Positions 1-39,700 of a stretch of DNA of 64,000 nucleotides are shown in pieces (within the stretch, counting starts at the first letter, position 1; every line of letters begins with the position of its first letter). The notes under the pieces were generated by a model. That model did not search any database. It saw nothing but the letters and a program-made list of their open reading frames with translations, and was not told where the DNA came from. The translations under genes and the position numbers were made by a program. Source of the DNA: Phallusia mammillata (Eukaryota); the NCBI GenBank assembly GCA_965637545.1, contig OZ281498.1:2046001-2110000 (forward strand), read 5' to 3'.

Positions 1-1754
1 CAAATGGTATCGGGCACTTTTTTAAGAATTTAACATGACTATTCTCCATTTTGGCCATTGGTAAGATTATGAAAGCAAGTTTTGCAAACGTAAAGTAAAA
101 AAGCGTGTAGAAATAGAAGGTGGTGTATAGACTATATAGCAGCAATTTTCGTCTGCCCTGGAGCTATAACTAACGCAGTGAGCGCCGGCATGTAAATGTA
201 TACACAGCCCGGGGGCCTTATAGCGATTTCGCATACTTATGTGTCTGCTGCCATTCAAGCACCACGCCATCTCAAGGTCGTACGCACGTCGGCGAAGGTC
301 AAATGCGGTGCCGACATTTTACTTGCGTAAATATACAAAGATGCGATAAACTATGTGAGATTTCTGTTTAAGGACATTGTGGGTTACTATCACCAAATAT
401 CTATGAAGGAGACATATTCAAAAACAAATTGGACTTTACAGCGGCAAAAACATATTTTCCCAAAATGTACAGCTTTGTGTTGCATTACTCTTTTACAATT
501 TAGATTTTACACTTATTTGTAACGTTTATAGACACACAGTTTATTTATCATTGATAAAAGACAGCCGGTCTGTTTCCGGTAACTATTTTGTTCAAGATGA
601 GAAAACCAATTGGATATCAACAATTGCAACCAAGTTATAATTTGTGTTTCAAAGAGGTTTTAAATAGATGCATAGTTGACCGTAATCAGCTTGGGATATG
701 TCGCAACTTCACAATAACTTAACGAAACATAAAACTCGATGTATCATCAATTCAAATACCACTAAAAACCTAAATTTACTAAACGAGAATCAATGTAGCA
801 TCAATATTAAGTAAGTTGGTGATTATAAATTCAAGCTGGATAATTCACAAAGTTCATATTAGCGAACAAAAAATCTAGAACTATGCGTAACACTTCGCGC
901 TTATTAGTCTATGTAACGCTCTATTTTTAAGTAAAATGCTTTAGGACTAGTTGTTTTTTTATTCAACTCTTTAAACAACTGGCAAAATTTCCCAATTTTT
1001 AGCGAAACAAATTTCCCAATTTTTCAGGCGAATTTGAGATGGAAATTATTGACGTCGACGTGTCAAATGACAAGTAATTCCCCCAAGTAACCTGATCTGC
1101 GCTATTATCCTTGGCAGGTGTTCACCTACCGCGAAATATGACGCTGTTACTCGTCTGTGACGTGTACAAAGGCACGTGGGTGGTGTTGAGTGAAATTAAT
1201 ACTTCACTACACAACTGGGAATTTTTGTGGTAGATTTTATTGAATTCCAACGTTTGCGTAATACTGATCCGTTTATTCGATCGTTATAGGTTTGCGTTTT
1301 ACTGAGTAACCTTTAGGTTTTTTAACCAAATAAGGCAGTTTTCGAGGAAAAGTGGTTCGCCATTTAATTTAGTTGGATCTTCGGTTAACAATGGTTCACA
1401 AGCCTTTTAATAACTGAAAGTACATTGGTTGCGTAACAAGTAGATTGCCAATAAAATTACGCTTAACGTTTGGGTCGCCTTAAAAAAATTTGTGAAGCAC
1501 TGAAATAAGCAGTAGGCTCCCCACAAATATCACTGAACAAAAAAACTATTTTTGCATTCACGAAAAACCTGGCAAATCCCTTCGTGGTAGGCGACCACTC
1601 TTTACAAAAAGAGCAAACCAACAGAATGTAGCTTTATGCGCAACTCAAGACTTTACTAATTGTGTGCGATCCTGCAATAAAAACCAATACGAAGTTGTAA
1701 AACTTTAAACGAAGTAAATTAAATAATGCAGCGCGGCAAAGTGAAAAACAATCT

Positions 1755-1986
1755 TGACCTTGAAATAAACGACATTTAACCTTAAAACGGCTAAAATATT
1801 TCAGAAAGATATAGCGCAAGAGCCACGTGACCTTGAAATTGCACCAAATTTGACCTTGATCATGGTTCGCAAAAAACGTTATGTAATATTATCTGCCGAA
1901 ATAGCGCATTGTCTCATCTTTGTAAACAGCGCGATACCGGGCACGTTTGCAATTTGACCTTGAAATTGCTCGAAATGTGACCTTGA
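1755..1986. promoter_or_regulatory. Homotypic cluster of five TGACCTTGA (TCAAGGTCA) motifs
   Basis: Exact copies at 1755, 1828, 1851, 1955 and 1978. TCAAGGTCA is the monomeric NR5A/ERR nuclear-receptor site; function is not shown. Confidence 0.5.
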
Positions 1987-4900
1987 ACGTTGTATTTTAA
2001 GAGATTTACAAAATTGTGTCGCCGAATAGCAATGTGCAAATCTTTCACACTGACATGGTAAAAGGGTAGTTTGTAAGAGAAGCATTAAAATTGCGTGAGA
2101 TAAAACATTATCACCCTGGGAAAAAAGCTTCGGATTGTGTGGGAATGCTTGAGAGACCGAGATGTGCATTATGCGGGGATGGAAGCGGCAATTATCTTTC
2201 TTTTTCCCCGGTTTGTCCTAATGCAATGTATGTTCGCAATTAAAAATAGGCTTGGTTGATTCGAGTTACATTGCTCTGTGCATTATTATGTTATCCAATG
2301 TTATTCTATCGCATGTTTGGGTAACTGAAACATTTATTTAAAATTCATCGCCGCATATTCATTGTACTTTCTAAAATAATTAAACTGTTATGGTATATCA
2401 GCATTTGTCCTTACATTTGCGTCGACATTTTCTTGTTGAAGCTTTATTTCTTCAATACAATTATGTATAATGTCTGCAAAGGAGATTGTTTGTAATGAAA
2501 GAGTCTTATGCGCGTTTTCAAGTTGCTTTCAACAATTTGGCATATATATAACGGAATACCTCATGTATTAAAAACCTATAAACGAAACTGGAGTGAATCG
2601 TTCTTTTAGATATTTGTCGTGTAATTACAATTTTTAATGATGATATAACTAGCCTAATACCACCAACGTGTGTACGCTTAGTCACTGCTTTCGTAATTTT
2701 GTATTGCTTTTAAGCCGTCGGGTATCTTTAAAACTCACAAAAAAGTGCCAGTAATAAGTTCATCCCTACATCTCAATTTATACACACTTTGACAGGGTCT
2801 TTGATACCAACACTTTTCCCAATGGAGAAATGTCTGACACTTGGTTAAACTATTGAAAACACCATAAGATTTTAACCATACAAGCCTGTATATTGTGCAA
2901 AACATTTTTGACATTTGATTTAGTCAACTTTAGGTTTCGCTTTGATATTTTCTGTTTGTTATAATTACAACACACAGCTGTCCCGATCATATTGATAGTC
3001 TACCACGTAATAAACAAGTAAAATGCCGTGAGGTCCTTAGAATAACAACATCACAAAATTAATGTCAGAAATGGAAGGGCATCTTATTCAAAAGTAAAAC
3101 AACAAAAAAATGTAAATCAAAACGCTTGTTTCAAACCGTTTATTATTTTGTTAACATTTGCGTAACATATTTTCTGATGTACTTTTTTTACAACAGAAAT
3201 CAGATTTGTTTAACGGACTTTAAGTCGTTAGAATCGCTGAAGGGGAATAATGTCCGAAGTCCAGTCCCTTTGCAAAGTTCTTGCTCAGTAGCACCACCCA
3301 ACGGCAACTGATGGTGATTATTTAATGAAATGACAAATCAACAAAAATAGATGCGAATTGTTTGAGGTACATTACTCAAGAAAAAATCATAATTCCAATA
3401 AAAAAAAAACATTGTGGCAGTTACAAGTTAAAAAATCAAATTGCATAAACACAAACACATTGAAGGGGGACTTTAACAAAACTTTAGAATTAACACAGAA
3501 TTTTACTTCCAAGACAGGATAGATGATTACAAAACATAAATACAAAAACACAAGACTAGTCACAGTAGCCAAAAATTAACACGAGCTAAATCAATAACAC
3601 AATGATTTCACACCAACCACACCACCTCACACAAATAAGCAAGCACCAACACATAAGCGAGTTTCACAAATTATCATTTAATATTTCTTTGATGGAACTT
3701 GATTTTGAAACACAAAGAGCAACACGGCGTGATAAAAAAGGAAAGAAACGAAGAATTTATACAACATAAATAAAGTGCCATTAAACCAATGAACTTGCGG
3801 ACAAGAAAGGGAAAAAATCCCAAGTAGTTTTGCATTTAAGCAGAAATTTTGTCACACTGAGATACTTTTCAACACTTGTTGCATAAAACCCCATAAATTG
3901 CATCAAACTTCGACATTATTTGTTTGATTACTTCACCTATTGGTAAAAATAAACATTGATTGATTGCTTTTACAAAAGTGCCAAACTCTACTTCACTTTT
4001 TGTGCAAATGAAACAGACACACATTGTGTTAACACCACAAGAAGCTGAAACCAACCACAAATAGCCCAAAAAACCTGAAGAGAAAAATCTAACAAGAGCG
4101 ACACAGCGAATGAAACTTAATAGCGCAATTCAAAACAGACAAGACCAAAAAACACAGACGCAAACATAAGGAAATCACAAACCAACGCAAACACTTGAAA
4201 ATATTTGACACCTTGGAACAGAACCAAACCCGGAAAGGTCAGTCAACCTAAATGCGGAACAGAGATTTCGAACTCCGATAACCGTTACAATCACGAAACG
4301 GGCTTGCTACATGAAAATATCACATTGGTCAATGTAAGGCCCCAAACAGCTCGCCTCTGTAACAACAAACACACGTTCAAGTCCAACGAAGGCGTTTGAA
4401 GGCAAAATGACTGTATCAAGTGAAACTGACGCACGTGTCGTGTGATATTTGATGACTGGTAACTGCTGGGAATAAATGATTTGCGGTGTCAGTTTGCGTA
4501 AGATCGTGGCCTATCCCTAACTGATAGTGGTGGCCCAGTACTTCGTGAGTTCTATTTGGCCGAGAACCAGACCTTAAGGTCAATTTTGCGGCTGCTATGG
4601 CGCAACACATGTATGACGTAACAATAGATTACGCGCGCTATTTTGGCTGCATGAAACTTGGACGCAGCAAGAGATGTTTATGTAACAAAACTTGCAAGTT
4701 GGACAAGAAATGTTTGTTTCTCGAATCGAGACAAAAATTCATGTCATTAAGTTTGTGTTGATCATCAATTTATATTTAACAGATTTTGATCAAAGTTAAT
4801 ATGTGTTCTGTACCACGCCCGACCGAGCCCATCCCTGCAAATTAGTGTAAGCAATCTTGCTAATTTCGTTTGTTGTCAACCAACACAGTTTTTTGGTTCC

Positions 4901-5031
4901 AAATTATCGATAACATAACATATTAAGTCAACTGTCCTATTTTCTATTACACCCAGTAGGCTCGTATTAGTTTTGAAGAACCAAATTTCACCATCATAAG
5001 GTGTGGCATAAACTTCAACGAACTGATTCAG

Positions 5032-8000
5032 CTAAAATCCACATGAACAACCCAAATCGTTCTCAATTAAGTTAAGTAACTTTTTATCTTTCAGACAAGA
5101 AAAGGGTAATTAGTTATAAATGTCAAACCGACCGGTATTGCTGACAGGTGATCACGCGCGCCAACTAGCGGATATAGAAACTCACCCATTTCTCCGCTAT
5201 TTATGGTTGGAAAGCCGGATGTAGATAAGTGGCTGTAATATTGTTCGGAGAGCTAAAATAAGAAAAAAATAAGTTGTTCATGAGCTTTCCGAGTCATTAG
5301 GGTTAAGGAATATAGTAACTTTAAAAAAATACAAAGGGGATTGGACTTTTTACTTTTTCAAGCAGATGGATCAATCCTGAAACTAGGTTTCAAAAAATAA
5401 TTACACACCATAATGTTTTCCATGTGTTTCTGCTCGTGCGCCACACATGACTCAGCACGCGTGAATAGTTGTGAACAGAAGGAACACTGGGTCATCGGTG
5501 CGGATAAGTGAGTTCGCTGGTGACGTTCGAGAAGTTGTTTGTTCATCGAAGACTTGCCACAAACCTCGCATATCTGTTGACAAGAAATAATTGTTAAATG
5601 CAACCAGAATTGTGGAGTGGAGGTCGGTGGATTTGCGCTCACTTTTTAAGGATCGGAGTAGTTTTCGAACAAATAATGTGGAGTCGGAGTTGTTATATTT
5701 TCGCCGGCTTGGGACTTTTCCCAACTTTGTTAAAATGAACGCAACAAAGTGCAATGTCAAAGGCTTCGAATTTTTGAAAAGTGGAGTCAAGCGTCGAGAT
5801 TTTTTAAACCGTCGCCACGACTCTGCAAAAGATGCTAAGGTGGGATAGGAACCGCCAACCTAGCAAACACCAAGTAATTGCCAACCAGTAAGGATGAGCC
5901 AAAATTGTCAATGTCTGTTGCCAATTTAATGCTCAGTTAGTTTGTGCGATGCTCGGCCGAGCACAGAGCATTAAAACCAGCGATGCTCGGTACCGAGTAA
6001 TCGGGTTCTGACTCGTTTGTGAGATTAAAGCAACTGTAGGTTGCTTAGGTTTTTTCAAAAGCATAGGTTTTTAATCAGAAGTTGTAGTTCCTGGGCGTAC
6101 AAGTACATTATTCAATTCCAACTCTGAGCCAGGTTTTAATTCTGTACAATTAAAGCAGGTGACTACACCTAATACAAAACTTTTACCAGAGAGGATTGTG
6201 AAGTGTGGTATGTTTTAATGTGTCTGCAAAGATCGGGCTTGACTGCAAAGTCCTTGTCACATTGGTCGCAGGGAAAAGGTCGTTCTCCTGTGTGGAACCT
6301 CTCATGCCGACGAAGATTGTTCTGCAACAAAATGTATATTGTAACACAGGTTGTATTGTTTATTGCCGGTTGTGCAAAACGGATAGTTTATATACGTGGT
6401 AAAGAATGTCTGGCAATGACGCTATATTTATAGACAGCATTGATTTGTTACTTAATTTTTGAAAAAATATATCGTATGAACTACTATCCTCCACAGCCGC
6501 AAACGCGCAGGATATGCACAAAATTAAAACACGCCTGAAAAAACTAACAGTTAAAAATAGACCGCTGAAAAAAAAATAGGGCACGAATGTTAAAAAGCAC
6601 AGCAGATGCACCTTAAGACCACTTTTAGGATAAAAAAAAAACTTTAGGTGCAAAAAGCCTGCAACCTGCTGTGATAAAAACAGTTATATCGGCTAAATTG
6701 GATGAAGTTAGGAACGTTTAGTTGCGCCAAAAGTAAAGGGTAAACCCACAGCTCTATAAAACGCATTAGACGTATGAACAGATCCATGTAGTGTTTCAGC
6801 ATTTAAGTTTCTCTAACAGTTAGGGGTCGTCAACCCGCGGCTATGGAGCCGCATGCGGCTGTTTGATCCCTCGGATGCGGCTCAGTTTTTGAAATTATCA
6901 AATGTTTTATGACACTTTCTGTGGCAAGTATGCCAAACACAAAGTCGAAAATGAAAATTGCGTTGCAATAACATGAGCGTACCCGCTGATAGTAGTTACA
7001 ATTAACCGCCTCCACCATGAAACGCCAGGTCTGAAAGAGGCAAATTGGCGGCACGCAGGTTAACAAACAGTTACTTAATATTGCAAAAAGTCGAGGTCGT
7101 GAGACCAGAAACTTTCTTTTCAGTGGCAATCCATTTTAAAATGGCTTTGTGGCTTTTTTACAATGTGAAATTGGTCTGAATGGCTCTTAACGGGACAAAG
7201 GTTTTAATTTTTGATTGATCTGTGAACAAAAGGGGACAAACTAGATTTTGTTTTGATATTAGCAAGTGAAGCTGCGTAGCATATACTTAACACACACCTT
7301 GCTGAAGATGTCCTAAAGGAGACTTCAAAATGTAGGATTAGTAATTTCGATTGATAATTGAGTTAAGCAAGAGGAAAGTTTATGAAACATGCCTAGCAAC
7401 AACACTACACTTAAGCACACACCTTGTTTGACAATCCTTCCCCACAGAACGAGCAGACATACATTCTTTCCTGTGTATGCGATTGCATATGATCCTCCAT
7501 GTGGCGTTTCTGATTAAACTTTTGTCCACAATCATCACATGTGTATGATCTCAATCTCAGATGCACAGCTTTAGCATGATTCTTTAAACAAATCACACAA
7601 GTATATAATTGAAAAAACACATAATGATTACTTTAGCTTTTGTGCTTTACATATGACCATAGTATAACTAGTTGTGAACTTTTGAAACAAATTTCCCTAC
7701 CAGGACATGCCTAATTTGTTTAATGCTTTTTTTTACCAAAGAGTTTACTGATAGACAAGGCAAACCACAAATAATTCATTTATTTTATACAACAGCACAT
7801 TCACTGCCACTGCAGCCAAACTTTGTAGAATCTGCCTTCAAGTCACACAGCCTGTTGCAGTAACCACAGTGTATATAGATAAACTTTCTTTTGATTTGAT
7901 GACATTAGTTTAAAAAATGTTTACTTGACAGCACAAAAACTAAATCCGACCAACCTCAGCTCCAGCAGAATATTTGTAATTCTTGTGACAAAATATGCAT

Positions 8001-9304
8001 TTATAAGCTCTCCTAATGTGGCTTGATATATGTCGACCCAGCGCTCTGGATGAATGAAAGCAACTAAAACATAAGCTTTTGATGTTTGGATGTGATACAT
8101 ATGACAGGAATATCAAAAGTGAACTTACAGGTTACATAAAACGCACTGCTTCATATTTCCTTGGTGTGACAACAAATGACTGATAAACGATCTAGGATGT
8201 CTGCATGTAAATAAACATGTACTGGAATTTAATGTAATTTTGGCTCATCTCCACTTTACATTAACACCAGCTTTCCACCACCTAGTTTTATAAGAATGTT
8301 TACTTAACAAGTCACATATATATGAGTGAGCTGGAAACACTGTTACAGCCTATTAAGCTGGTAGCGAAAGATTGACTGTTAAAGGTAGGGTAGCCACATA
8401 AAGCCATGACTGAAAGTCACATTCTGATAGTTTAACAAATTTTGTATGTTGGATTTGGTACAGAATTTTTACATTGGAAGATGGTGACACTTTCAACTTA
8501 GCATAAGTTTTCTTATGTTCATAAACAACATAAAAAAGTTCAAGAAGAATCATGACAAGGTTTCACAGACAAATAATCTTACCTAAAAGAAGACCTACAT
8601 ATAGGGCACAACAGAACGGAGCATGACGCACCAATGTTAAGTAATCGAGTTGTTTTCTGTTAAAAAATAATGATATGAACAAAAATAAATATTTAACCAG
8701 CAAATTTTGCAACTCACATACTTTGGAACTTAAATTCAGTTCACTGAGTTGAAAGTGGCGAAAGTATAAAAGTCCTCTACAAGAAAACAAAACCTATATT
8801 AACACTTTTAACAGCAGACAAAAATCATTTAGTCACATTTTGATAGGCATTAAAAATCACAACAATTGTTAAGTTGTATCTTAAACCAAGTATAAAGCAT
8901 GGACTTATCTGGTAATTACTTGACTAATTTATTAAGCATTTCATGCAGTTAAACAGTTTATATGCTACTATATATATATAGTTTGCAAATTTTATCTGTA
9001 TGATTACACCTCTTGGTTTAACCAACTTTATCATTTATGACTATGATTCTAAACATTTATAAGATGATTCAATTTTCATTACAAACTTTTAACTTACGAA
9101 AAAGCTCGATGGGATCTATGTTTGACTTTGAGTTTTGTGTGAAAATTCTGCAAAGGTTTAAAGCATGACAAGATATTTGAACATCATCAAACCATTTGTT
9201 CCTACCTTCTTGTGACAAACTGTAGCATGATTGCATGGAATAGTTGGAAATGCAGAACTTTCAGCAATAACAATAATTTGCAAACTCTTATCAGGTAATT
9301 TCAT
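5032..9304 (-). CDS. C2H2 zinc-finger protein, 8 fingers, about 346 aa, 11 coding exons
   Basis: Exons 9304-9206, 9147-9098, 8776-8722, 8656-8583, 8200-8129, 8063-7955, 7581-7423, 6321-6187, 5573-5409, 5252-5186, 5087-5032. All junctions are GT-AG and phase-compatible (1041 nt including stop). Fingers include CPICRSSFRHPRSFISHLLSH, CDDCGQKFNQKRHMEDHMQSH and CSFCGEGLSNKNNLRRHERFH, with a canonical TGERPF linker. The start codon and last two exons are less certain. Confidence 0.88.
5605..5828. mobile_element. Degenerate MITE with GGAGTCGGAG-type ends
   Basis: TTGTGGAGT(C)GG-like starts (5609, 5679) and a CGACTCTGCAA end; no TSD seen. Confidence 0.45.
5890..6016. mobile_element. Internally deleted, inverted copy of the 10558-10932 MITE family
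   Basis: GATGCTCGGCCGAGC...GCGATGCTCGGTACCGAGTA..CGGGTTCTG is the reverse complement of about 10572-10650, and the left end TAAGGATGAGCCAAAA matches the TIR. Confidence 0.8.
6821..7205. mobile_element. Truncated hAT/Charlie-like MITE
   Basis: Begins TAGGGGTCGTCAACCCGCGGCTATGGAGCCGCATGCGGCT, typical of a Charlie-type left end; right TIR decayed. Confidence 0.6.
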
Positions 9305-9830
9305 GATAATGTAACAATATCAGTCATTTGATTTGAATAGTAACTAAACTCCGTTAAAACAAACAGAACAGTTAAATTAGCTTGCATGTAACTTTTTTAG
9401 TTAGGTCCGTAGCAAATTAGCAATCACGAATTCGCCACGGTTTAAAGTTGATCGTTTATCTTCTGAGAAAAAACGGTTGTCTGTTGTGCACAAGCGTTTT
9501 GTCTCTAGCGCTTTTAGGTAAAAAAAACTAACGGTATGCGAGATATCATTCTTAGAAAACAATTTAAAACTCTGCTATTAACCAAAATTTGCTTCTCTAA
9601 AGTACTTTGTCTAAACTCTAAACCCACTGACGAAAATTTCAAAATGGCGCGCCAAGTTTTTACACATAGAAATATTATATTTTTAAAGTAAAGCGAAATA
9701 TTTCTTTTTTTTGTAAATTTTAACAAGTTAACACTGGATTTTTTTCCTGATTTTTTTCTGTAATTGAAACTATTGTTTAAAACAAACTTGGCAATCAATT
9801 CCAGAAAAGTTTTATTTCACGCACATGACA

Positions 9831-12800
9831 TTAAATGTCCGCAATCTCTTCAAGAGCAAGAAGTTCAGAATCGGAATCCGTACCCAAAAGATTTTGTGTC
9901 ACAAACAGTTCATCATCGGATGGAAGCAAGAATTTACATTTGAGAAGATACGAGCACAAATTGTCAACTGGATTTGATAAAGTGCTTCTTGTTGGAACAT
10001 TAGGATTTGTAATGGCTGATGGACCACTGCATTTTTTGTCTGTTTGAACAAAAAAAGTCGGAGTGAAAGAGTTGGTATGCATATATCCAAATTTACTTCT
10101 TTAACATTGGTCTTACAAGTGCCACAAGTCTGCAGTGTCTGTAGTGTTTCAAAATCCAAACTTTTTATTGATTTGCAATTTCATTATGTGCACAAATGGT
10201 TATGCTCTTGCAAGACTTCAAAAGGTTGAGAAAAACTGCTTTACTCACTAACAAATGAGTCCCACAGTAAACAGGATTTAAATGCATCAAAAGTGTTACA
10301 GATTTTTAGTAGCCCTTGAAGTCACATAATTTGCTTTGTGTTTTAAAACATAGGTAGAAATGCAAACCTTGGTGATGCTTAGGTAGTTTAGCATTAGGTA
10401 CATTAGTCCAAGGAACAGTATTACTAGAAATGATTCCGTGGGGTTGTTTTCCACTGGAAGCAATGTCTTTCAAAGACTGTCCATTGTAAAATATCTGAAA
10501 TAGGTCAATTGTTAAAAACGAATTGATCACTGTAGATTTAACCAACAGGCATTTCACTAGGGATGGGCCGAGCCGAGCCAGAACCCGAGTACTCGGTACC
10601 GAGCATCGCTGTTTTTAATCGGTGCTCGGCCGAGCAGTTGCACAAACTGAGCCGAGCGTTAAATTTGCATTTTCATGCCCTGCTAACTAACGTAAATAGT
10701 GTTCTAAAGGGTGTCTATGAACAAAAACGAATGATTTTTCAAATGTACTAGGTGGAAAAAAGCCTACTTTATGGGCATGTACAGCTTAATAAAACACCGC
10801 CGGTGACGTAAGAAATCTTGTAGAGCTGAAACGTAGAAAGGGGATTTTTGTGACATCATAATGCACCGAGCGTTAAAGTGAGATGCTCCGTGCGCGACCA
10901 AACAGAACATTTGCAGTTTTGGCACATCCCTACATTTCACGGTAGCTTATTGTCATAAGGTAGGCAATATAGGAGCTCATTGTATTGAAGAGAAATCATT
11001 TATATGATAAACAAATCTACTTTGTGATTTAGAACCTACAACAAGGACAGGTGTTTTCCTACCCTTTGCAGGGACAATAATGATCTGCTTTGTTTTTGCC
11101 ACACATTTTGCAGAAAACAGAGAAAAAGCAAGTAAATTTATTGCTTAAGTGTAATAAACTCAATTCAAAACACATTTACAAACCTTGGAAAATGCCTGAT
11201 CTTTTGAGAAAGTCAACTTGGTCACAGCATTTAACCATGATTGAGGGTTAACATAAATGTCATGATCAGTTGATACAATTAAACCAGGGTGAACCACTGT
11301 AGCTGCATAATTTGTTCCCTAAAATGTTCACATATTAAAAGTTACATCACAGACATAACCACAATTCAATATTTTGTACACATAAAAAACTACGTAGAAA
11401 TTTATGACAGGTAATTTTGTTCAACAGGTATATTTTGACCAAAATATATTTTGACCAATTAGATTGTTAAAATAAACCCTAATTTCTGATGTCAATTTAT
11501 GTTGGCTGCTACATAATTATGGCAGGAAAATAAATTGGCCAGAAAAAAACTAATAAATTTTGGAATAAGATATGTGACATAAAATTTCCTTGAGTGGATT
11601 TATTTAATCTGTTGTAACTTTATGACACCAATCTTACCTGAACAGAACAATGTAAAACATCTGAACCTTTTGAGACGAATCCTCGCTGGAACATATCTTT
11701 AAAATCCAAAGGCCTGTCTGAATCAGTTGCAGAGAACTTTACTTTATTAGTAGGCTGAAAAACATTGGTCGAGTTTGTTGGTATTCCACTATTACACGAT
11801 TGAATATCAAACTTTGGTTGGTGCAGAAACTGTTGGCTTGTTCCTGGCTGGGTTATAACCGAACCAGAACTGCCAGTGCACAATGTAGGAAACTTAAATA
11901 CAGAAAGTGGCTTGAGGGGTGAACTTTCAGGACTGTTGCCACCACAGTCATCCATGTCATAGTCTGAATAGTCATCATAACAACTGGGCGAGGTTGTGTT
12001 TAGAAGGTTGGGTTTGTTCACAAATGGCTTGTTGAGTGTCTTTTCACTCAATGCTTGTTTGGTTTTCGAGTAGGATTTGTCTGGTTTTGTTTTGTCGTTG
12101 ATTCCAGAATTGATCTTTTGTGTTGCATGTGTTTTTTGCATTACACAGATAAGTTTTGAGTTGTATTTCTTCAGAGGCAACTTTGGTTGAACTTTTGATA
12201 TTCTGTGCCTGTAAAATTATATACTTAAACTTTTGGTGGTTGCTGTTATGTTTTAATTCATAATTTACCTTTGTTTTACTGATGAAAGAATGGATTGACT
12301 GGATTGAATATCTGAGGTAGTTTCTACCTGAAAAAAAATTACCTACTTACTAAATCGGTTACTATGACATTTTTTGTTCAGTATGGAAATCAAGTGGTTA
12401 TGAGAGGTTATGCGAATTAGACTAATATTGCTAAAATCCAATTTAAATTAAGGAGGTATATTATCATCTAGTACTTAAACTATAGACAGTCACCAAATTT
12501 ATCATTAAAAACTGCATTTGATTTATCCACACATTACTGTTTTATCTCAGCACTATATACTGTGTCTGCTCATGCACAAGTTCACTGGCAGTGACAATTG
12601 TTTTCGTCATAAGTCTGAATACGAAAAAAAGCAATGGCAAATGTGTGTTAAGTTATGGTATTCTTAAAGTCTGTGTCTTGTGTATCTAAGAAACTTTTTG
12701 TTAATAATATTAAATGTTATCAGAACAAATATTTACTTGATAACCAACCTTGTCAAGGCTTTCGCTGTTTCTTGCTTTTGTTAATTCATTATTCATCTCC

Positions 12801-15507
12801 TCAAACTGAACTGATATTTTTTCTAGTCGCCTTTTTCTTACTTCCTGAAGAGCGTCGAATTCTGCTTTGTTTTCCCTGTTTTTATATGGTAAATTACCAA
12901 AATAGGAACAATATTTTACAACAGTTGCACAAAGACTCTAATGCATCTGTCATCAATATTATAAATCCTAATGTTCTTTCAGCTTAAGTCTGATACCTTT
13001 CACTTTCCTCTGAATCACTGGATAAGTTTTCTTCACTTTTTATGTCAAACTTTATTTGATCAATCCTTTTCTTCACATCTCCATGAAGCATTTTATCGGC
13101 CTGTTCTAAAAACAACTAAATAAGTCAATCCGATACATCAACCATAATTGTAACACTTAAAATAAGTAGATATGCTTTTACATGTAACTGCAATGAACAT
13201 TTAAGTTTCTTTTTACGCAAATTTTTGGTGTGTGGATGTTTCAATGTTTTAACCCAGGGGTGCACATCCTTTTCGCTAATTTGTCAGCATCGCCAATCCA
13301 TATTTCATCTAAGGCTGCTAATCACCGGCATGTTGTGGTTTTATTTGATGCACAGATTGAGCTGCACAGTGTGAAAAACAGTCTTTAACTATTTATGACA
13401 TCATAATTCATCTTGTAACGCTTGTGGCACCTTTTTTTCGCATTGTTTGCACACAATAGGCGTACAAAAAGTCTGGCACATATAGCTACTAGAGCAGTTT
13501 GAAAATCAAAATATTTAGCAAAAACGTTTTATTTCCTTTAAGGCCACCAATCCATATATTTTAATAAACATGTTCAAGGCCACACTAACTCGTCGCTCTG
13601 GCCGTATGTGCCGATCCAGCCGCAGGTTGTGCACCCCTGTCTTAACCTTACACTTGCAAGATAAAATTGCTTAACTCGAAAATAGGCACATGACACAATT
13701 TGTACATTATTTACCAATATATTGATGATTGTCAGATTTGATGAGAATAGAAATAGATGAAAACTTGGCTTCAATTATGTTTAGTGATTCCATAAGTTGA
13801 CGGTGTTTCTGAAAAATACCTTTGCTGAAACATATGCTACACCAATGGTTTACAGTGAATTTTGACCCAAAGTCAATTGAACAAATGTGATATGGTAATT
13901 GTTACCTTGGTAACTTTGGGCTTATTTTTACTTCCAAGTGGTTGACTTGCTGAAAATGCCATTTTGTTAAATTGGGTCCATCTGTAAAAAAATTAAAATT
14001 CAACAACAGACAACAAATTGAAGATGTGCTTCTATGCAGTCATTTGTATTTTGACCGATCAAAATTTAAAAATTGTTTCATCCTATGTGTCATAGCTTTT
14101 CATATGTTCAAAAGCGAAATAAATAAATTAAAAATAAATTCATTTGTACCTTCTCTTTCGTTTTCTTCTTTTTCGTTTGGTGAAACTGGTTTCTGTTACT
14201 TTTACAATTTCATTTGGCAAAACTTGTGAAAGACAGTTTCTTTCAAATGCTGCAGGATTCTGTTGGTATTTCTGTGTATCTGGAATTTCTGGTTGAGTCA
14301 GGTACAGCATGTTTGAGGCAACGCTGTCAGGGGAATTGTTCATGGACTTAGATTCTGTTCTTGGGAAATCCTGCATGGGGATAAATTTAAAATATTATGG
14401 TATATTGTACTTTACAATATTGCCACTTACATCAAATTTTTAATGGCAAAGTGGTAAACAAAATAATGTCTCATATACAAACGATACTCACTGAAATTAC
14501 ATTTATTAGTGATAATAAACAATAAAGGTTTCATAAATAACATTTTAATTTTATGGAAACATAAGGTTTTACAGAATCAGAATACACTAAAACTACATAC
14601 TTCACAAAAATCTACAGTGGGTTTGGAACTTTTAATGACAGCCAGCTCCACACTAAAGTCAGACAGCATTGTTTCATCACTGTCAAAATCCTCACTTGGT
14701 TCATTTGCACTTTTTTCAGTCATCCTGTTAAGCAAAAAAATGATGTTGCAAAGGCTATACAGATGAATCTGGTTAATAACATAATTAATTGGTCAAGATT
14801 GTTTGCAATTAACGTATGGTGACACAAATTTTCACAACAATAAGCTACAATTGGGTTTTACAACCTCTATGCAATTAAGTGGATTATGCAAGAAACTGGA
14901 CTCTTCTGTGTATGTGCAAAGATAACCTTGTGATTAATTATTTCCTGCTTTACTGCTAAACGGTTGTAGGTCAAAACGGAATGCACTGTCTGCAGCTAAC
15001 TATTTGGTTTAACCCAGTGGTTCTTAACCTTTTTTCTTTGCTGCACCCCTTTCAAATCACCAACCAATTTTTGCGCCCCCTGGTTTTTTGTATTTATTTA
15101 GAATAGACCTAATCAACCTTAATGATTCAGCATCCCCGCACCCCCTAGGAACAGTTCTTGCATCCCTTGCGGGGGGGGGGGGGGGTTCGGGGGCGTGCAC
15201 CCATGGTTAAGAACCCCTGGTTTAACCAACGAAACAATGGTTTTCACACAAGTATATTATCTTGTATAAATATATTTTTTATGAATTACCAAACAACAAA
15301 CATAACAGTTTTTTTTGTGCAGCATAATGTAGTTGTTACAAACTATATCGGACAAACTTTTACTTACAGCTGATTAAGAAGATTTCCCAGCGGTTGTGAC
15401 AAAGCATCGAACATATCACAATCAGATTCGAAATCTTCGCTCTGTTTTACAACTTGCCTCTCGCAAACTTCTGATAAATTGTCACTAATTATTGGTTCTA
15501 CTTCCAT
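9831..15507 (-). CDS. ANKRD31: ANKRD31-like protein with RAMA domain and no ankyrin repeats, about 663 aa, 12 coding exons
   Basis: Exons 15507-15368, 14724-14601, 14370-14150, 13981-13906, 13808-13715, 13105-12997, 12875-12749, 12327-12269, 12208-11638, 11318-11184, 10494-10368, 10039-9831. All GT-AG and phase-matched (1992 nt); AATAAA at 9811-9816 on the minus strand. The segment LDFKDMFQRGFVSKGSDVLHCSVQGTNYAATVVHPGLIVSTDHDIYVNPQSWLNAVTKLTFSKDQAFSKIFYNGQSLKDI fits the RAMA pattern. N-terminal FDSDET and C-terminal YLLKCKFLLPSDDEL resemble vertebrate ANKRD31 as recalled. Gene model is firm; the name is moderately confident. Confidence 0.72.
10558..10932. mobile_element. hAT (Ac-type) MITE, 375 bp
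   Basis: TIRs TAGGGATGGGCC / GGCACATCCCTA with an exact 8-bp TSD CATTTCAC (10550-10557 and 10933-10940); in an intron of the ANKRD31-like gene. Confidence 0.92.
13255..13639. mobile_element. hAT (Buster/Charlie-type) MITE, 385 bp
   Basis: TIR CAGGGGTGCACA / TGTGCACCCCTG; 8-bp flanks TTTTAACC / TCTTAACC (7 of 8 match). Confidence 0.88.
15015..15219. mobile_element. hAT (Buster/Charlie-type) MITE, 205 bp, with internal poly-G run
   Basis: TIR CAGTGGTTCTTAACC / GGTTAAGAACCCCTG; exact TSD GTTTAACC. Confidence 0.92.
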
Positions 15508-16021
15508 TATGCTTTCTGGGTTAAACTGTTACACAGAGACGGCGAAAAAACTTACAATTGCAGAACGCATTTCTTTTTCGAAATCCCCGCACACCAAATA
15601 CGTACTTTTAAGGTTCACCTGTGGTACACAAACAATACTTTGAAATGTTTTTTACTGTTTTTCTTTTATTTCATGAGCTTTTGGCTGATGTGAAAATTCA
15701 AAACTACAGAAAATGCTGAAGCATCGAGTGTTTAATATCTACAGCACAGTTAAAACAAGTGTATAAAAAATAACAAATTCAACGCGATAAAAAGTGCAAG
15801 CCTTGCAAGAGGGTACAATTACATAAAACTGAAATGAATGAAAAATAACTTTCCGCAGAAGTCCAATAATACCTCAGATTTAGTTTAGTTGGTATAAATC
15901 GCTATAAAGTTATCCTCAGGAATTCCGTGAAAAAGATAAAACCAGAGAACGCAAATTTAACAAAACAAAAATCTTTCAATATGGGGAAGCCACAATGTGA
16001 ATTAACTGTTGCCCTTGAACG

Positions 16022-36700: not shown

Positions 36701-39700
36701 TTTTCAGGTGGTACGCGAGTAGCTTCCGCTTTTTTCACAAAAACCTGGATTTACAACTTTATATTTTGTTTATCTGATTTTGCTTACAAAAAATATTCTC
36801 CAAGCTTCTTCTTATTGTTATACGTAACTATTCCTGTTGTTTCGTATCATTACGATCTTCAAAATACAGGTTATGTCAATTGTCAATAAGAAACACAACT
36901 GCTTTGAAAAACCGTAAATGCTGTGGGACAGTGGGCATTAATTATGTCGAATGATTGCTCTTGATAGATATCATCTACTATTTTATAGCTTAAGCTACAA
37001 ATAGCGTTGAATAATGCTAGTGTTGTAAGCTAAAAATAGATCAGGATAAAATGTTCAATAACGGTTACGTATGAAGACGTAGTTTATGCTTCGTAGTAGT
37101 GCATAGGAATGTGAGCAGATATTTTCCGTCACGATGATCATCAAGTCAAAAATTTGAAACCGACTAGGTGCGCCGGGAAATGACTTTCGATGCGTTGCAA
37201 GTTTACACCGCGCATCGACCAATTGGTGGACAGTAAACAAAAATCTCATTAAATTTCGTTGTGGTGCTTTAGTGTTATTTTAGTAGGCCAATATTATTCT
37301 TCTGAATAAAATATGATTCGATCAAATTAGTTGTTCTGCAAGAAGTGGTACGTGGCAGTACAGAGCGTCCAAGTGGTACGAGATCGCAAAAAGGTTGGGA
37401 ACCCCTGATTTATAGGTTGCAAACATATCAAGGTTCGGGTCAAAGGTCAAAATGTACTATTTTGTTTAAATTGTACGTTTTTATCTCGGAAAAACAACTA
37501 ATGGTACATTGAAATTTTCAACATTCTCGTATGCAGTAATGTGTTGTCAAACAAAAGAAATGTCCCCTAGCTACCTTTTACACGTTGCAAACAGACCTAT
37601 GTTCAGGCAAAAACAAAATGTCCTATTTTGTTTGCATTGTCTGCAATATTTAGGCAAGTCAATTTATACATATTAAACTTTTTCAACAATCCGAAAGATA
37701 CTAACGTTTCTGCAAAGGCTAAAATGTTCTATTTTGTTTAAATTTTCTGTTAAATTTAATGAAATAAACTTATTTGTGGCATATTTACCTTTTTATCAGT
37801 GATAAAAATAAGTTAACAATATTTTGCCAAAAGGAAACATTTATTTGGTTAGACTCTCTGTAATATGCAGACAAACAATCTGAAAGGAGTGTGTTAAACT
37901 TTTCATGCAGTAATACTTGGACAAATAGCAAAATGTCGAAATTTGCTTGGACTTTCTGTTATTACACACAAATATTAGAATCTTACCGTTTGACATTCCC
38001 GGAGGTTTTCGCTTCTCTATGATGTACCACGTGTACATAGCCTTCTTCTTCTGTCCGCTAATATCTTGGGGTTGGGCAAGCCACTGTGAGATGTAACTCT
38101 GACTGATCGCTGTAACGAAAACATGCAGGTTGAAAACATCAAGGGGAAAAGCTGCTGTCGCAGAAGTTGTAAGCAGCAAAAGTTTCTTACGACCTAAATT
38201 TGGCACATCAAACTTTAGTCTGCTTTTCATTCTCCCCAAAACACGGCAGAGAAATCATCTTTCATTGGTTGTTTTCATAAGTACAAGCAAATTTACCACG
38301 AAAATATAATCACTACATGGGTATTTATGTGCAGTTATAGTTTGACAAAAAGAAATAAATTAGTCAAAAAACTCAAAGACTTGCAATAAAACGTTTTGTT
38401 TTTGTTCAACGAACTTAGTTTTGCGATCAAATTTAAACTTTTTATGAGTTCATCTGCACTTAACAAAGAGGGATTGTTAAGTGAGACTTGATTGCGGATC
38501 TCAAATAATCCAACCAACAAATGCCGAGGTTTAGTTAAAACCATCATCACATTTTGCGGCAAAAAACTTATTGGATTCAATCTTAAGCCGCGTTAAGTAA
38601 TGTCAGTGGCGTGTTTTATGGTGAAGTTAAACCAGAAAATATCAGAGGGCAAGTGGAGCCGTTAGATTAACCTTAAATTTACTATCCAGAAATACGGTAC
38701 TTCGTTCATTAAAATTTTCAAAAAAATATGAGATTAGTTTTCTGACTTAGAAAAATACAAAACAATCAGTAAAATTTAGGTCCAAGAAAAACTGTTTATT
38801 ACATATGGTTTAATAAAAATGGTGAACGGCTTTATGATTCAATTTACACAACATTTTCTTTTGAGAATTTCCCAGAAACTAAAGATTAACCACGGCAGAC
38901 GGCATGGAATTTTAATTTTCAGTGGGAAAACGCAATCCACAATGATTCGTGTTGTTTACCGCCCAAAATAAAACACACGAACATGGAATCAAGTGCATTT
39001 ACCACAATCCAGCCGCAGCAGTCACCAAATGCTCAAGAAGGTAGCAAGCTTTTAAAGGTCATGAAGAAGCGTTACAAGGTCATGAACCAACCAGGTAAAA
39101 AGCGAAAAGAGAATAACAATTCTTTTGTGGGTTTTGCTACCGCGAACACAGCTCTTGTTATTCATTCATTTATTTATTTCGTTCACGCGCAGTAAGTAAT
39201 CGGTTACGTATGTACATTCAAATTGCAACGGCGCAAACAAAAATGGATCAGCTGGAGCCACTAGTGGCCATTACAAGTAGCTGACCCTATCTATTTAAAC
39301 GGTTGAATATGATACTTTTAAACAAGGAATAAACAAGAAAAGAAGGCAATAAAGGACACAATAAAGTTTGAAAAATAGTGATAAATTCTGCACATGAAAA
39401 TCTCAAGTCATTGTGAAGCGTTGTGAGTATAAGAGAAGTCTCACGAGGCAAAGCGTCACAGCAGACTAGGTCACAGCAATTTCCTCGCAGCAATATTCGA
39501 TTGATTACGTGCAAGGCGGGGTAATTAGCACAGGAATTTTGGGACCAATTAAGACAAAACACCCCGTGGAATGTAAACACAGGACCTCGTGGTGCTACAT
39601 TACATAATGTGCCAGTGAGCATACCTGTGGCTGTGGGTTTAGGAATATGTTGCAATGAGGAAAAACCTTAAATTACGCTTGAATACTGTGAATCCGGTTT

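What the first reader, a model, noticed from the sequence alone, without database searches (positions are those of the whole stretch)
9831..15507. ANKRD31-like meiotic scaffold with no ankyrin repeats
Seen: a closed 12-exon, 663-aa model with no ankyrin (GxTPLH-type) motif and no phase gap needing extra exons. It has an NLS-like KRKRRKRKRR, a coiled-coil-like segment and a C-terminal RAMA-like domain. Recalled knowledge: vertebrate ANKRD31 (about 1870 aa) starts with WDSDETVIE, has a RAMA segment IYKNPVTWL...AWSKVTYLG and ends in a REC114-binding peptide YLQI.EILLISDQE(L/F). Here the counterparts are FDSDETMLS, IYVNPQSWL...AFSKIFYNG and YLLKCKFLLPSDDEL, in the same order. ANKRD31 is usually described as a vertebrate meiotic double-strand-break organiser. 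Inference: an invertebrate chordate has a minimal version, implying the RAMA plus REC114-binding module works without, or predates, the ankyrins.
Basis: partly seen in the sequence, partly recalled or inferred. Interest (0 to 1): 0.8.

Follow-up and report, generated by a model that had tools for sequence, protein, structure and literature searches.

The report
Ankyrin-less RAMA-domain nuclear protein, tunicate
This sea-squirt gene is real and expressed and encodes a mostly disordered nuclear protein with one DNA/nucleosome-binding-type (RAMA) domain and no ankyrin repeats; it may be the missing invertebrate counterpart of the vertebrate meiotic break organiser ANKRD31, but that link could not be proven here.

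Summary
RNA contigs from two studies show nine of its eleven splice junctions, including 11184->10494. One contig reads through an in-frame stop just upstream of the ATG, so no upstream coding exon is seen. Transcript variants give pN/pS of about 0.11. No ankyrin motif or Pfam hit occurs in the gene or the window.

The RAMA-like domain is supported. Exon 10 hits Pfam RAMA only weakly. The spliced domain aligns to this genome's own MPND RAMA domain (shuffle p 2e-4 to 2e-3). Both genes share a phase-0 intron at RAMA profile position 42/43.

The ANKRD31 link is unproven. Against the solved mouse ANKRD31 C-terminal peptide, the tail scores at chance (p 0.5). In one register it keeps Y1818, L1819, S1828 and E1831 with identical spacing, and a near-identical distance to the C-terminus. 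It lacks W1842, Y1845 and W1857. No relatives were found in 1.8 billion representative proteins. Vertebrate ANKRD31, and hence its RAMA region, could not be fetched. Spliced proteins could not be passed to the folding or complex tools.

REC114 exists in this genome, but co-expression was not shown. My odds are about 45% for a true ANKRD31 counterpart and a similar figure for an unrelated lineage-specific RAMA protein.

The parts
15368..15561 (-). Exon 1: 5'UTR (at least to 15561) and the ATG at 15507. An in-frame TAA lies at 15531-15529, upstream of the ATG.
   Evidence: An RNA contig runs unspliced over 15367-15561. Stop position.
14601..14724 (-). Exon 2, an acidic N-terminal region that includes FDSDETMLS (14687-14661).
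   Evidence: Joints 15368/14724 and 14601/14370 appear in all four runs. Motif position.
14150..14370 (-). Exon 3. It ends in the basic NLS-like run KRKRRKRKRR (14178 through the junction to 13981).
13906..13981 (-). Exon 4.
   Evidence: Joint 14150/13981 in three runs.
13715..13808 (-). Exon 5, which my first model missed. It starts the helical segment.
   Evidence: Joint 13906/13808 in two runs. The donor at 13715 and the acceptor at 13105 are the only pair that keeps the frame open.
12997..13105 (-). Exon 6, helical and charged.
   Evidence: A contig piece spans 12996-13092 joined to 12747-12874.
12749..12875 (-). Exon 7, the best heptad-like (coiled-coil-like) stretch, res 265-297.
12269..12327 (-). 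Exon 8.
   Evidence: Canonical splice sites and an open frame. Its joints were not displayed.
11638..12208 (-). Exon 9: a Ser/Lys/Asn-rich disordered linker. Its last 30 codons (11727-11638) begin the RAMA-like domain.
   Evidence: Contigs cover 11637-12210. Four of the five non-synonymous variants lie here. Alignment to own MPND.
11184..11318 (-). Exon 10, the core of the RAMA-like domain (res 508-552).
   Evidence: Pfam RAMA E 0.038, profile positions 43-75. The exon starts at the same profile position and phase as the own MPND exon.
10368..10494 (-). Exon 11: the end of the RAMA-like domain (to about 10441), then linker.
   Evidence: Joints 11184/10494 (two runs) and 10368/10039 (four runs).
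9831..10039 (-). Exon 12: linker, then the acidic amphipathic C-terminal tail (res 623-663, 9956-9834), then TAA at 9833-9831.
   Evidence: Tail compared with mouse ANKRD31_C.
9811..9816 (-). AATAAA polyadenylation signal.
   Evidence: RNA contigs end at 9799-9818.

Best explanation
SHOWN. A single-copy, spliced, transcribed tunicate gene under purifying selection encodes a 663-aa protein. In order, the protein has:
- an acidic N-terminus;
- a strong basic NLS;
- a long helical, weakly coiled-coil-like segment;
- a disordered linker;
- one folded module, a divergent RAMA domain (res about 478-570);
- a 40-residue acidic amphipathic C-terminal tail.
It has no ankyrin repeats and no MPN domain.

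INFERRED. The protein is a nuclear chromatin scaffold whose RAMA domain contacts DNA or nucleosomes without sequence specificity, as shown for MPND. Most likely it is the fast-evolving tunicate counterpart of the C-terminal third of vertebrate ANKRD31, which runs coiled coil, then CR4 (recalled to be a RAMA domain), then the CR5 tail. Its tail would then dock on the REC114 PH domain. Y625/L626 and E638 would play the roles of mouse Y1818/L1819 and E1831, with E638 forming a salt bridge to the conserved Arg of the YSRF motif in this genome's REC114.

My step-wise odds are: real gene 0.97; RAMA domain 0.85; ANKRD31 orthologue 0.45; REC114 binding through the tail 0.3.
For: Gene model and junctions come from RNA contigs of two studies. 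pN/pS is 0.11, from 12 synonymous and 5 non-synonymous variants. The gene is single copy.

RAMA domain:
- It is the joint-top Pfam family for exon 10.
- The spliced domain against this genome's MPND RAMA scores 53, with shuffle p 2e-4 for the segment and 1e-3 to 2e-3 for the whole protein.
- Both genes share a phase-0 intron between RAMA profile positions 42 and 43.

This genome shows only two RAMA loci, MPND on C8 and this gene. Iyer et al. list RAMA plus ankyrin repeats as a eukaryotic architecture.

The order of coiled coil, CR4 (87 aa) and CR5 at the extreme C-terminus in mouse ANKRD31 matches the order here.

In the register Y625 = Y1818, the tail keeps Y, L, S1828, E1831 and L1832, with identical spacing. 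The distance from that Glu to the C-terminus is 25 aa, against 26 in mouse. The Y1818A/L1819A and E1831A mutations abolish binding in mouse.

This genome has a REC114 gene with the YSRF and SRMFRVQF motifs, which hold the ANKRD31-contacting Arg residues.
Against: - The tail against mouse ANKRD31_C is at chance by unbiased alignment (score 18, p 0.5), and the proposed register is not the best local alignment.
- W1842, Y1845 and the C-terminal W1857 have no counterpart. W1842A disrupts binding in mouse, and the other two make contacts in the structure.
- The second ankyrin domain is conserved in all vertebrate orthologues but is absent here.
- phmmer of the tail against PDB does not find 6NXF.
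- Mouse CR5 does not pick out this locus in the genome.
- Exon 10 finds no true relative among 1.84 billion representatives.
- The RAMA Pfam hit is far below the cut-off (14.4 against 35.2 bits) and tied with a spurious family.
- No P4 run was listed as holding this gene, although four P4 runs hold the full REC114 mRNA.
Confidence: 0.43

Rival explanations
1. A lineage-specific RAMA-domain chromatin protein, functionally unrelated to ANKRD31. An old copy of the metazoan RAMA module became embedded in a disordered nuclear protein. The resemblance of the tail to ANKRD31 CR5 is chance, and the protein works as a generic DNA/nucleosome-binding scaffold, not necessarily in meiosis.
For: - The tail similarity is not significant.
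- No ankyrin repeats are present.
- No detectable relatives were found, even though other agents found tunicate relatives for other genes of this genome.
- Expression was seen in runs that are not the listed REC114 holders.
- NLS, acidic tracts and helical segments are common features of disordered nuclear proteins.
Against: - Few RAMA genes exist in chordates, so a second non-MPN RAMA gene in the sister group of vertebrates is most simply an ANKRD31 counterpart.
- The RAMA domain sits near the C-terminus and is followed by a short structured tail, as in ANKRD31.
- Hot-spot residues are kept with exact spacing.
Confidence: 0.45
2. A relatively recent MPND paralogue that lost its MPN/JAMM domain.
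For: It shares the phase-0 intron with this genome's MPND RAMA domain, and the pairwise alignment is significant.
Against: - Identity to this genome's MPND RAMA is only about 20%, whereas that MPND matches human MPND at 63.8 bits over 51 aa.
- The second RAMA intron lies at a different position.
- There is no MPN trace.
- The flanking architecture is entirely different.
Confidence: 0.07
3. A transcribed but non-functional or mis-modelled locus.
For: Low RNA contig depth (about 5-8), and no homologues were found.
Against: - Twelve canonical introns give one open 663-codon frame.
- Junctions were seen in four runs.
- pN/pS is 0.11.
- The transcript is closed at both ends.
Confidence: 0.02

Closest known systems
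Vertebrate ANKRD31 (mouse, 1857 aa; REC114 partner in meiotic DSB control)
   Same: - The order of modules in its C-terminal third is the same: coiled coil, an ~87-aa conserved region (CR4, recalled as RAMA), then a ~47-aa extreme C-terminal tail.
- In one register the tail keeps Y1818, L1819, S1828, E1831 and L1832, and the distance to the C-terminus.
- Both are fast-evolving and largely disordered.
   Different: - It is a third of the length.
- Neither ankyrin domain is present.
- W1842, Y1845 and W1857 are not kept.
- No significant sequence similarity to the solved CR5 peptide.
- No evidence yet for REC114 binding or meiotic expression.
- ANKRD31 is described as vertebrate-specific (10.1101/425322; PMC10666023).
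MPND (RAMA + MPN/JAMM deubiquitinase-like protein; structures 7YDT/7YDW)
   Same: Both have a RAMA-type domain. The pairwise alignment with this genome's MPND is significant, and the two share a phase-0 intron. The MPND RAMA domain binds dsDNA and histones without sequence specificity (PMC9963953), a plausible activity here.
   Different: There is no MPN domain. The RAMA domain lies at the C-terminal rather than the N-terminal end. Identity is about 20%. This genome has a separate, well-conserved MPND on contig C8.
[quoted passage not shown]
   Same: It is the joint-best Pfam match for exon 10, collinear with profile positions 43-75, and the NPxSW core motif is present.
   Different: The score is 14.4 bits against a cut-off of 35.2. 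The domain is split over three exons, and the spliced domain could not be submitted to Pfam.

Membership tests
ANKRD31 | Ankyrin repeat domains (the second one is conserved in all vertebrate orthologues) | tested here: not met
   No Ank hit in the eight exons scanned. No ankyrin motif in any frame of the window. No Ank_2 hit within the window. The transcript is closed by an in-frame stop upstream of the ATG.
ANKRD31 | C-terminal CR5 peptide homologous to the REC114-binding tail (mouse 1808-1857) | tested here: inconclusive
   Smith-Waterman against 6NXF chain V (P0004) scores 18, p 0.5. Even so, Y1818, L1819, S1828, E1831 and L1832 are kept with exact spacing, and the C-terminal distance is 25 against 26 aa. 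W1842, Y1845 and W1857 are absent.
ANKRD31 | CR4 region (recalled to be a RAMA domain) specifically related to ANKRD31 rather than MPND | not testable with these tools
   No vertebrate ANKRD31 sequence beyond the 51-aa PDB construct could be retrieved. The length limits of the word search and the lack of a reference for the spliced protein prevented the test.
ANKRD31 | Coiled-coil region (CR3) upstream of CR4 | tested here: inconclusive
   Residues 184-324 are free of Pro and hold a single Gly (G227). The crude heptad score is reached by 5% of shuffles.
ANKRD31 | Direct binding to the REC114 PH domain | not testable with these tools
   This genome's REC114 PH domain is split over at least 4 exons, so it has no reference to hand to complex prediction. 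The word search for a REC114 protein id was blank.
ANKRD31 | Meiotic / germline expression | tested here: inconclusive
   The gene is transcribed in runs of two studies, but tissues are coded. No P4 run was listed as holding this gene, although four P4 runs hold the full REC114 mRNA.
RAMA domain (PF18755) | Score above the Pfam gathering threshold | tested here: not met
   Exon 10 alone scores 14.4 bits, E 0.038, against a cut-off of 35.2. The flanking exon pieces give no hit. The spliced domain could not be submitted.
RAMA domain (PF18755) | Significant homology to a bona fide RAMA domain | tested here: met
   The spliced res 471-585 against this genome's MPND RAMA scores 53, against a shuffle mean of 25.7 +/- 4.4 (p 2e-4). 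For the whole protein p is 1e-3 to 2e-3.
RAMA domain (PF18755) | Gene-structure signature shared with a metazoan RAMA gene | tested here: met
   A phase-0 intron lies between profile positions 42 and 43 in both this gene and this genome's MPND.
RAMA domain (PF18755) | RAMA fold (beta-alpha-beta-beta-beta-alpha-beta, as in 7YDT / CcrM 6PBD) | not tested
   The domain is split over three exons, so there is no contiguous reference for structure prediction.
MPND | MPN/JAMM domain C-terminal to RAMA | tested here: not met
   No MPN hit. This genome's true MPND, with an HSH JAMM motif, lies on C8.

The most novel reading that the evidence does not exclude
Tunicates retain a true ANKRD31 orthologue that lacks both ankyrin domains. 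On this reading the RAMA domain plus the REC114-docking tail is the ancestral core of the scaffold and predates vertebrates. ANKRD31 would then not be vertebrate-specific, and its ankyrin domains would be either a vertebrate addition or a tunicate loss.
Probability: 0.4. Interest if true: 0.7.

Novelty: new variant of a known kind. Interest (0 to 1): 0.5.

Why it matters
ANKRD31 is currently described as vertebrate-specific. Which of its modules are essential is an open question in the control of meiotic DNA breaks. A natural minimal version in the sister group of vertebrates, with only the RAMA domain and the tail, would show what the ancestral scaffold did. It would also give a small, tractable protein for testing how RAMA-mediated chromatin binding and REC114 docking cooperate. 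Boekhout et al. noted that the ANKRD31-contacting residues of REC114 are conserved far beyond vertebrates. They speculated that ANKRD31 might be more widespread than it appears. This gene is a concrete candidate for testing that idea. If the link fails, it is still an undescribed ankyrin-less, MPN-less RAMA protein of tunicates.

Tried and rejected
1. Word search with exon 9 (190 aa): no hit.
2. Exhaustive phmmer of exon 10 against 1.84 billion representatives gave three hits. All were repeat proteins (LapA/Big_2 adhesins and an SDVLVNPGP-repeat protein), so they were rejected as spurious.
3. phmmer of the tail and of exon 10 against PDB: nothing.
4. Atlas look-alike search for exon 10 and the tail: nothing usable.
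5. I probed PDB with a 42-letter query that held only the residues named in the Boekhout preprint. This recovered the true mouse ANKRD31_C sequence. A word search with that sequence returned only the PDB construct itself, P0004. PDB holds no other ANKRD31 chain.
6. Mouse CR5 against this genome: one chance hit elsewhere, E 3.8.
7. Word search with this genome's REC114 exon, to obtain a REC114 protein id for a complex prediction: blank. Complex prediction was therefore not run. The spliced REC114 PH domain and the spliced target protein have no reference, and I did not type them.
8. For the same reason, Pfam, AlphaFold and fold searches on the spliced RAMA domain were left out.
9. Synteny: the neighbours are a C2H2 zinc-finger ORF and HMBOX1. 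Neither is a neighbour of human ANKRD31 as far as I recall, so this is uninformative.
10. Co-expression with REC114 through run lists: inconclusive, partly discordant.
11. Literature: no paper links ANKRD31 to tunicates or to MPND.
12. My first 11-exon model was rejected in favour of the 12-exon model after the RNA evidence.


Full report
ANATOMY AND OBSERVATION CHECK

The region holds a minus-strand, multi-exon gene. From the sequence I first built an 11-exon, 630-aa open model.

I then laid RNA-type Logan contigs of four runs from two studies on 9750-15700. A contig piece also spans 12997/12875.

The same contigs revealed an extra joint, 13906->13808, and therefore an exon I had missed. Adding exon 13808-13715 and moving the next acceptor to 13105 is the only combination that keeps the frame open.

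One contig continues unspliced from exon 1 to 15561, through an in-frame TAA at 15531-15529. No joint or loose end was listed at the potential acceptor just downstream of that stop. The N-terminus is therefore closed in the transcripts seen.

At the 3' end, TAA (9833-9831) is followed by AATAAA at 9816-9811, and contigs stop at 9799-9818.

The contigs carry 17 single-base differences inside the CDS, 12 synonymous and 5 non-synonymous. This gives pN/pS of about 0.11. Four of the five non-synonymous changes lie in the disordered exon 9. The gene is single copy in its 240-Mb genome. Notes by other agents on this genome call it a tunicate.

No ankyrin signature exists in any frame of the whole 64-kb window. 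The eight exons scanned gave no Ank Pfam hit. A genome-wide Ank_2 scan puts the nearest hits about 215 kb away, although only 150 of 557 candidates were scored.

WHAT THE PROTEIN IS MADE OF

By composition the protein has these parts:
- An acidic N-terminal 150 residues (net charge -20).
- A basic block with KRKRRKRKRR (net +15).
- A stretch free of Pro, with a single Gly (G227), at residues 184-324. It has weak heptad character; 5% of shuffles reach its score.
- A Ser/Thr/Asn-rich linker.
- The candidate domain at about residues 478-570.
- A second linker.
- A hydrophobic-acidic tail, residues 623-663 (net -7).

THE RAMA DOMAIN

Scanned exon by exon, only exon 10 (45 aa) hits Pfam RAMA. The hit is E 0.038 and 14.4 bits over profile positions 43-75. 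This is far below the cut-off. It is also no better than three other chance-level hits among the eight exons, so by itself it proves nothing.

Two independent observations rescue it.

First, the genome has a bona fide MPND on contig C8. Its RAMA exons score 25.9 and 52.7 bits, and a JAMM-type exon lies downstream. It matches human MPND (7YDT) at 63.8 bits. In a script I aligned the spliced candidate domain to that MPND RAMA domain. The Smith-Waterman score is 53, against 25.7 +/- 4.4 for shuffles (p about 2e-4). For the whole protein p is 1e-3 to 2e-3.

Second, the alignment puts the exon 9/10 boundary exactly on the MPND exon boundary. Both lie between RAMA profile positions 42 and 43, and both are phase 0. 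The second intron of the domain is not shared.

Identity to this genome's MPND is only about 20%, and there is no MPN domain. The gene is therefore a second, deeply diverged RAMA gene rather than a recent MPND copy.

For MPND, the RAMA domain binds dsDNA without sequence specificity and also binds histones (PMC9963953). That is the activity I infer here.

THE ANKRD31 QUESTION

Published facts come:
- ANKRD31 is described as vertebrate-specific.
- Its conserved regions are two ankyrin domains, a coiled coil (CR3), CR4 (1701-1787) and CR5 (1811-1857).
- CR5 wraps around the REC114 PH domain.
- The named contact or hot-spot residues are P1816, H1817, Y1818, L1819, Q1820, S1828, Q1830, E1831, L1833, W1842, Y1845, S1856 and the C-terminal W1857.
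- The Y1818A/L1819A, E1831A and W1842A mutations disrupt binding.

Iyer et al. only state that a RAMA plus ankyrin-repeat architecture exists in eukaryotes.

I recovered the real mouse CR5 sequence from PDB 6NXF by probing with the residues named in the paper (stored as P0004).

In the register Y625 = Y1818, the tunicate tail keeps Y, L, S1828, E1831 and L1832, with I1824->F and L1833->F. The 13-residue Tyr-to-Glu spacing is identical. There are 25 residues from that Glu to the C-terminus, against 26 in mouse.

An unbiased test is negative, however. The best local alignment of the two tails scores 18, the same as shuffles (p 0.5), and it is not even in that register. W1842, Y1845 and W1857 have no counterpart. 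phmmer of the tail does not find 6NXF. Mouse CR5 does not pick out this locus in the genome.

It would raise the segment score to about 28, which I estimate from the shuffle distribution as p about 0.02 tail against tail. I could not verify that consensus.

SEARCHES FOR RELATIVES

All searches for relatives were blank:
- The word search with exon 9 found nothing.
- The exhaustive search with exon 10 returned only repeat-protein artefacts.
- The Atlas searches were empty.

No full-length ANKRD31 could be retrieved. I therefore could not test whether the RAMA domain groups with ANKRD31 or with MPND, nor check the recalled N-terminal motif.

Those steps were left out rather than typing long sequences.

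REC114

The genome has a REC114 gene on C2 (Pfam REC114-like, 30.8 bits). It carries the YSRF and SRMFRVQF motifs, which in mouse contain R27, R114, R117 and Q119. Those motifs are conserved even in species without ANKRD31, so they do not discriminate.

Its PH domain is split over at least four exons, and its word search was blank. No complex prediction was therefore possible.

Run lists show full REC114 mRNA in runs of study P4. No P4 run was listed as holding the present gene. The gene is present in two P2 runs that show no REC114 words. Co-expression is not shown, and tissues are coded.

VERDICT

The gene and its architecture are solid, and the RAMA domain is well supported. The ANKRD31 reading is attractive on three grounds:
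- Parsimony: I recall only two such genes in vertebrates (MPND and ANKRD31), and two were detected here.
- Module order.
- Retention of two of the three mutationally validated hot spots, at the right distance from the C-terminus.

It lacks statistical support, however, and it fails the ankyrin criterion. I put about 45% on a true ANKRD31 counterpart. I put about 45% on an unrelated lineage-specific RAMA scaffold, with the rest on minor rivals. No paper linking ANKRD31 to tunicates was found.

Noticed in passing
window 13249-13645 and 15009-15225 (introns of the gene): Two short elements have 21-22-nt terminal inverted repeats beginning CCCAG and are flanked by TTAA, which suggests piggyBac-type MITEs. 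RNA contigs pile up on them at depths of 50-360, so copies elsewhere are transcribed.
   Followed up: partly
window 10546-10943 (intron between exons 10 and 11): A repeat with very high RNA-contig depth (up to about 900) and many loose ends at 10556-10567 and 10932-10934. No inverted repeat was found by the repeat finder. It is probably another dispersed, transcribed element.
   Followed up: partly
G000:C2:20893660-20894700 (L003 1144-2195): This genome's REC114 gene. The motifs YSRF, GGHLMITDNNIVLES and SRMFRVQF are recognisable. The exon 2/3 phases allow two models, and I favoured the one with the acceptor before TTAGTGG. Full-length mRNA is held by at least 8 RNA-type runs.
   Followed up: partly
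G000:C8:12991256-12993400 (L001): This genome's MPND orthologue. It has RAMA exons A, B and C, and a downstream exon with an HSH JAMM-type motif. Exon B matches human MPND (7YDT) at 63.8 bits over 51 aa.
   Followed up: partly
G000:C5:2275898-2283194, minus strand: Ankyrin-repeat exons lie on the same strand about 215 kb upstream of the gene. Other genes (HMBOX1 and more) lie between, so this is presumably an unrelated gene. It was not examined.
   Followed up: no
window 5361-5645 (-) and 37844-38254 (-): Neighbouring coding pieces: a C2H2 zinc-finger ORF downstream, and an HNF-1_N exon (HMBOX1-type) upstream. From memory, there is no shared synteny with the human ANKRD31 locus.
   Followed up: partly
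proteins P0001-P0003: A 45-aa beta-rich query gave E 1e-14 'hits' to bacterial LapA/Big_2 adhesins and to a eukaryotic SDVLVNPGP-repeat protein, through summed weak matches to up to 10 repeats. This is a caution for short-exon searches.
   Followed up: yes
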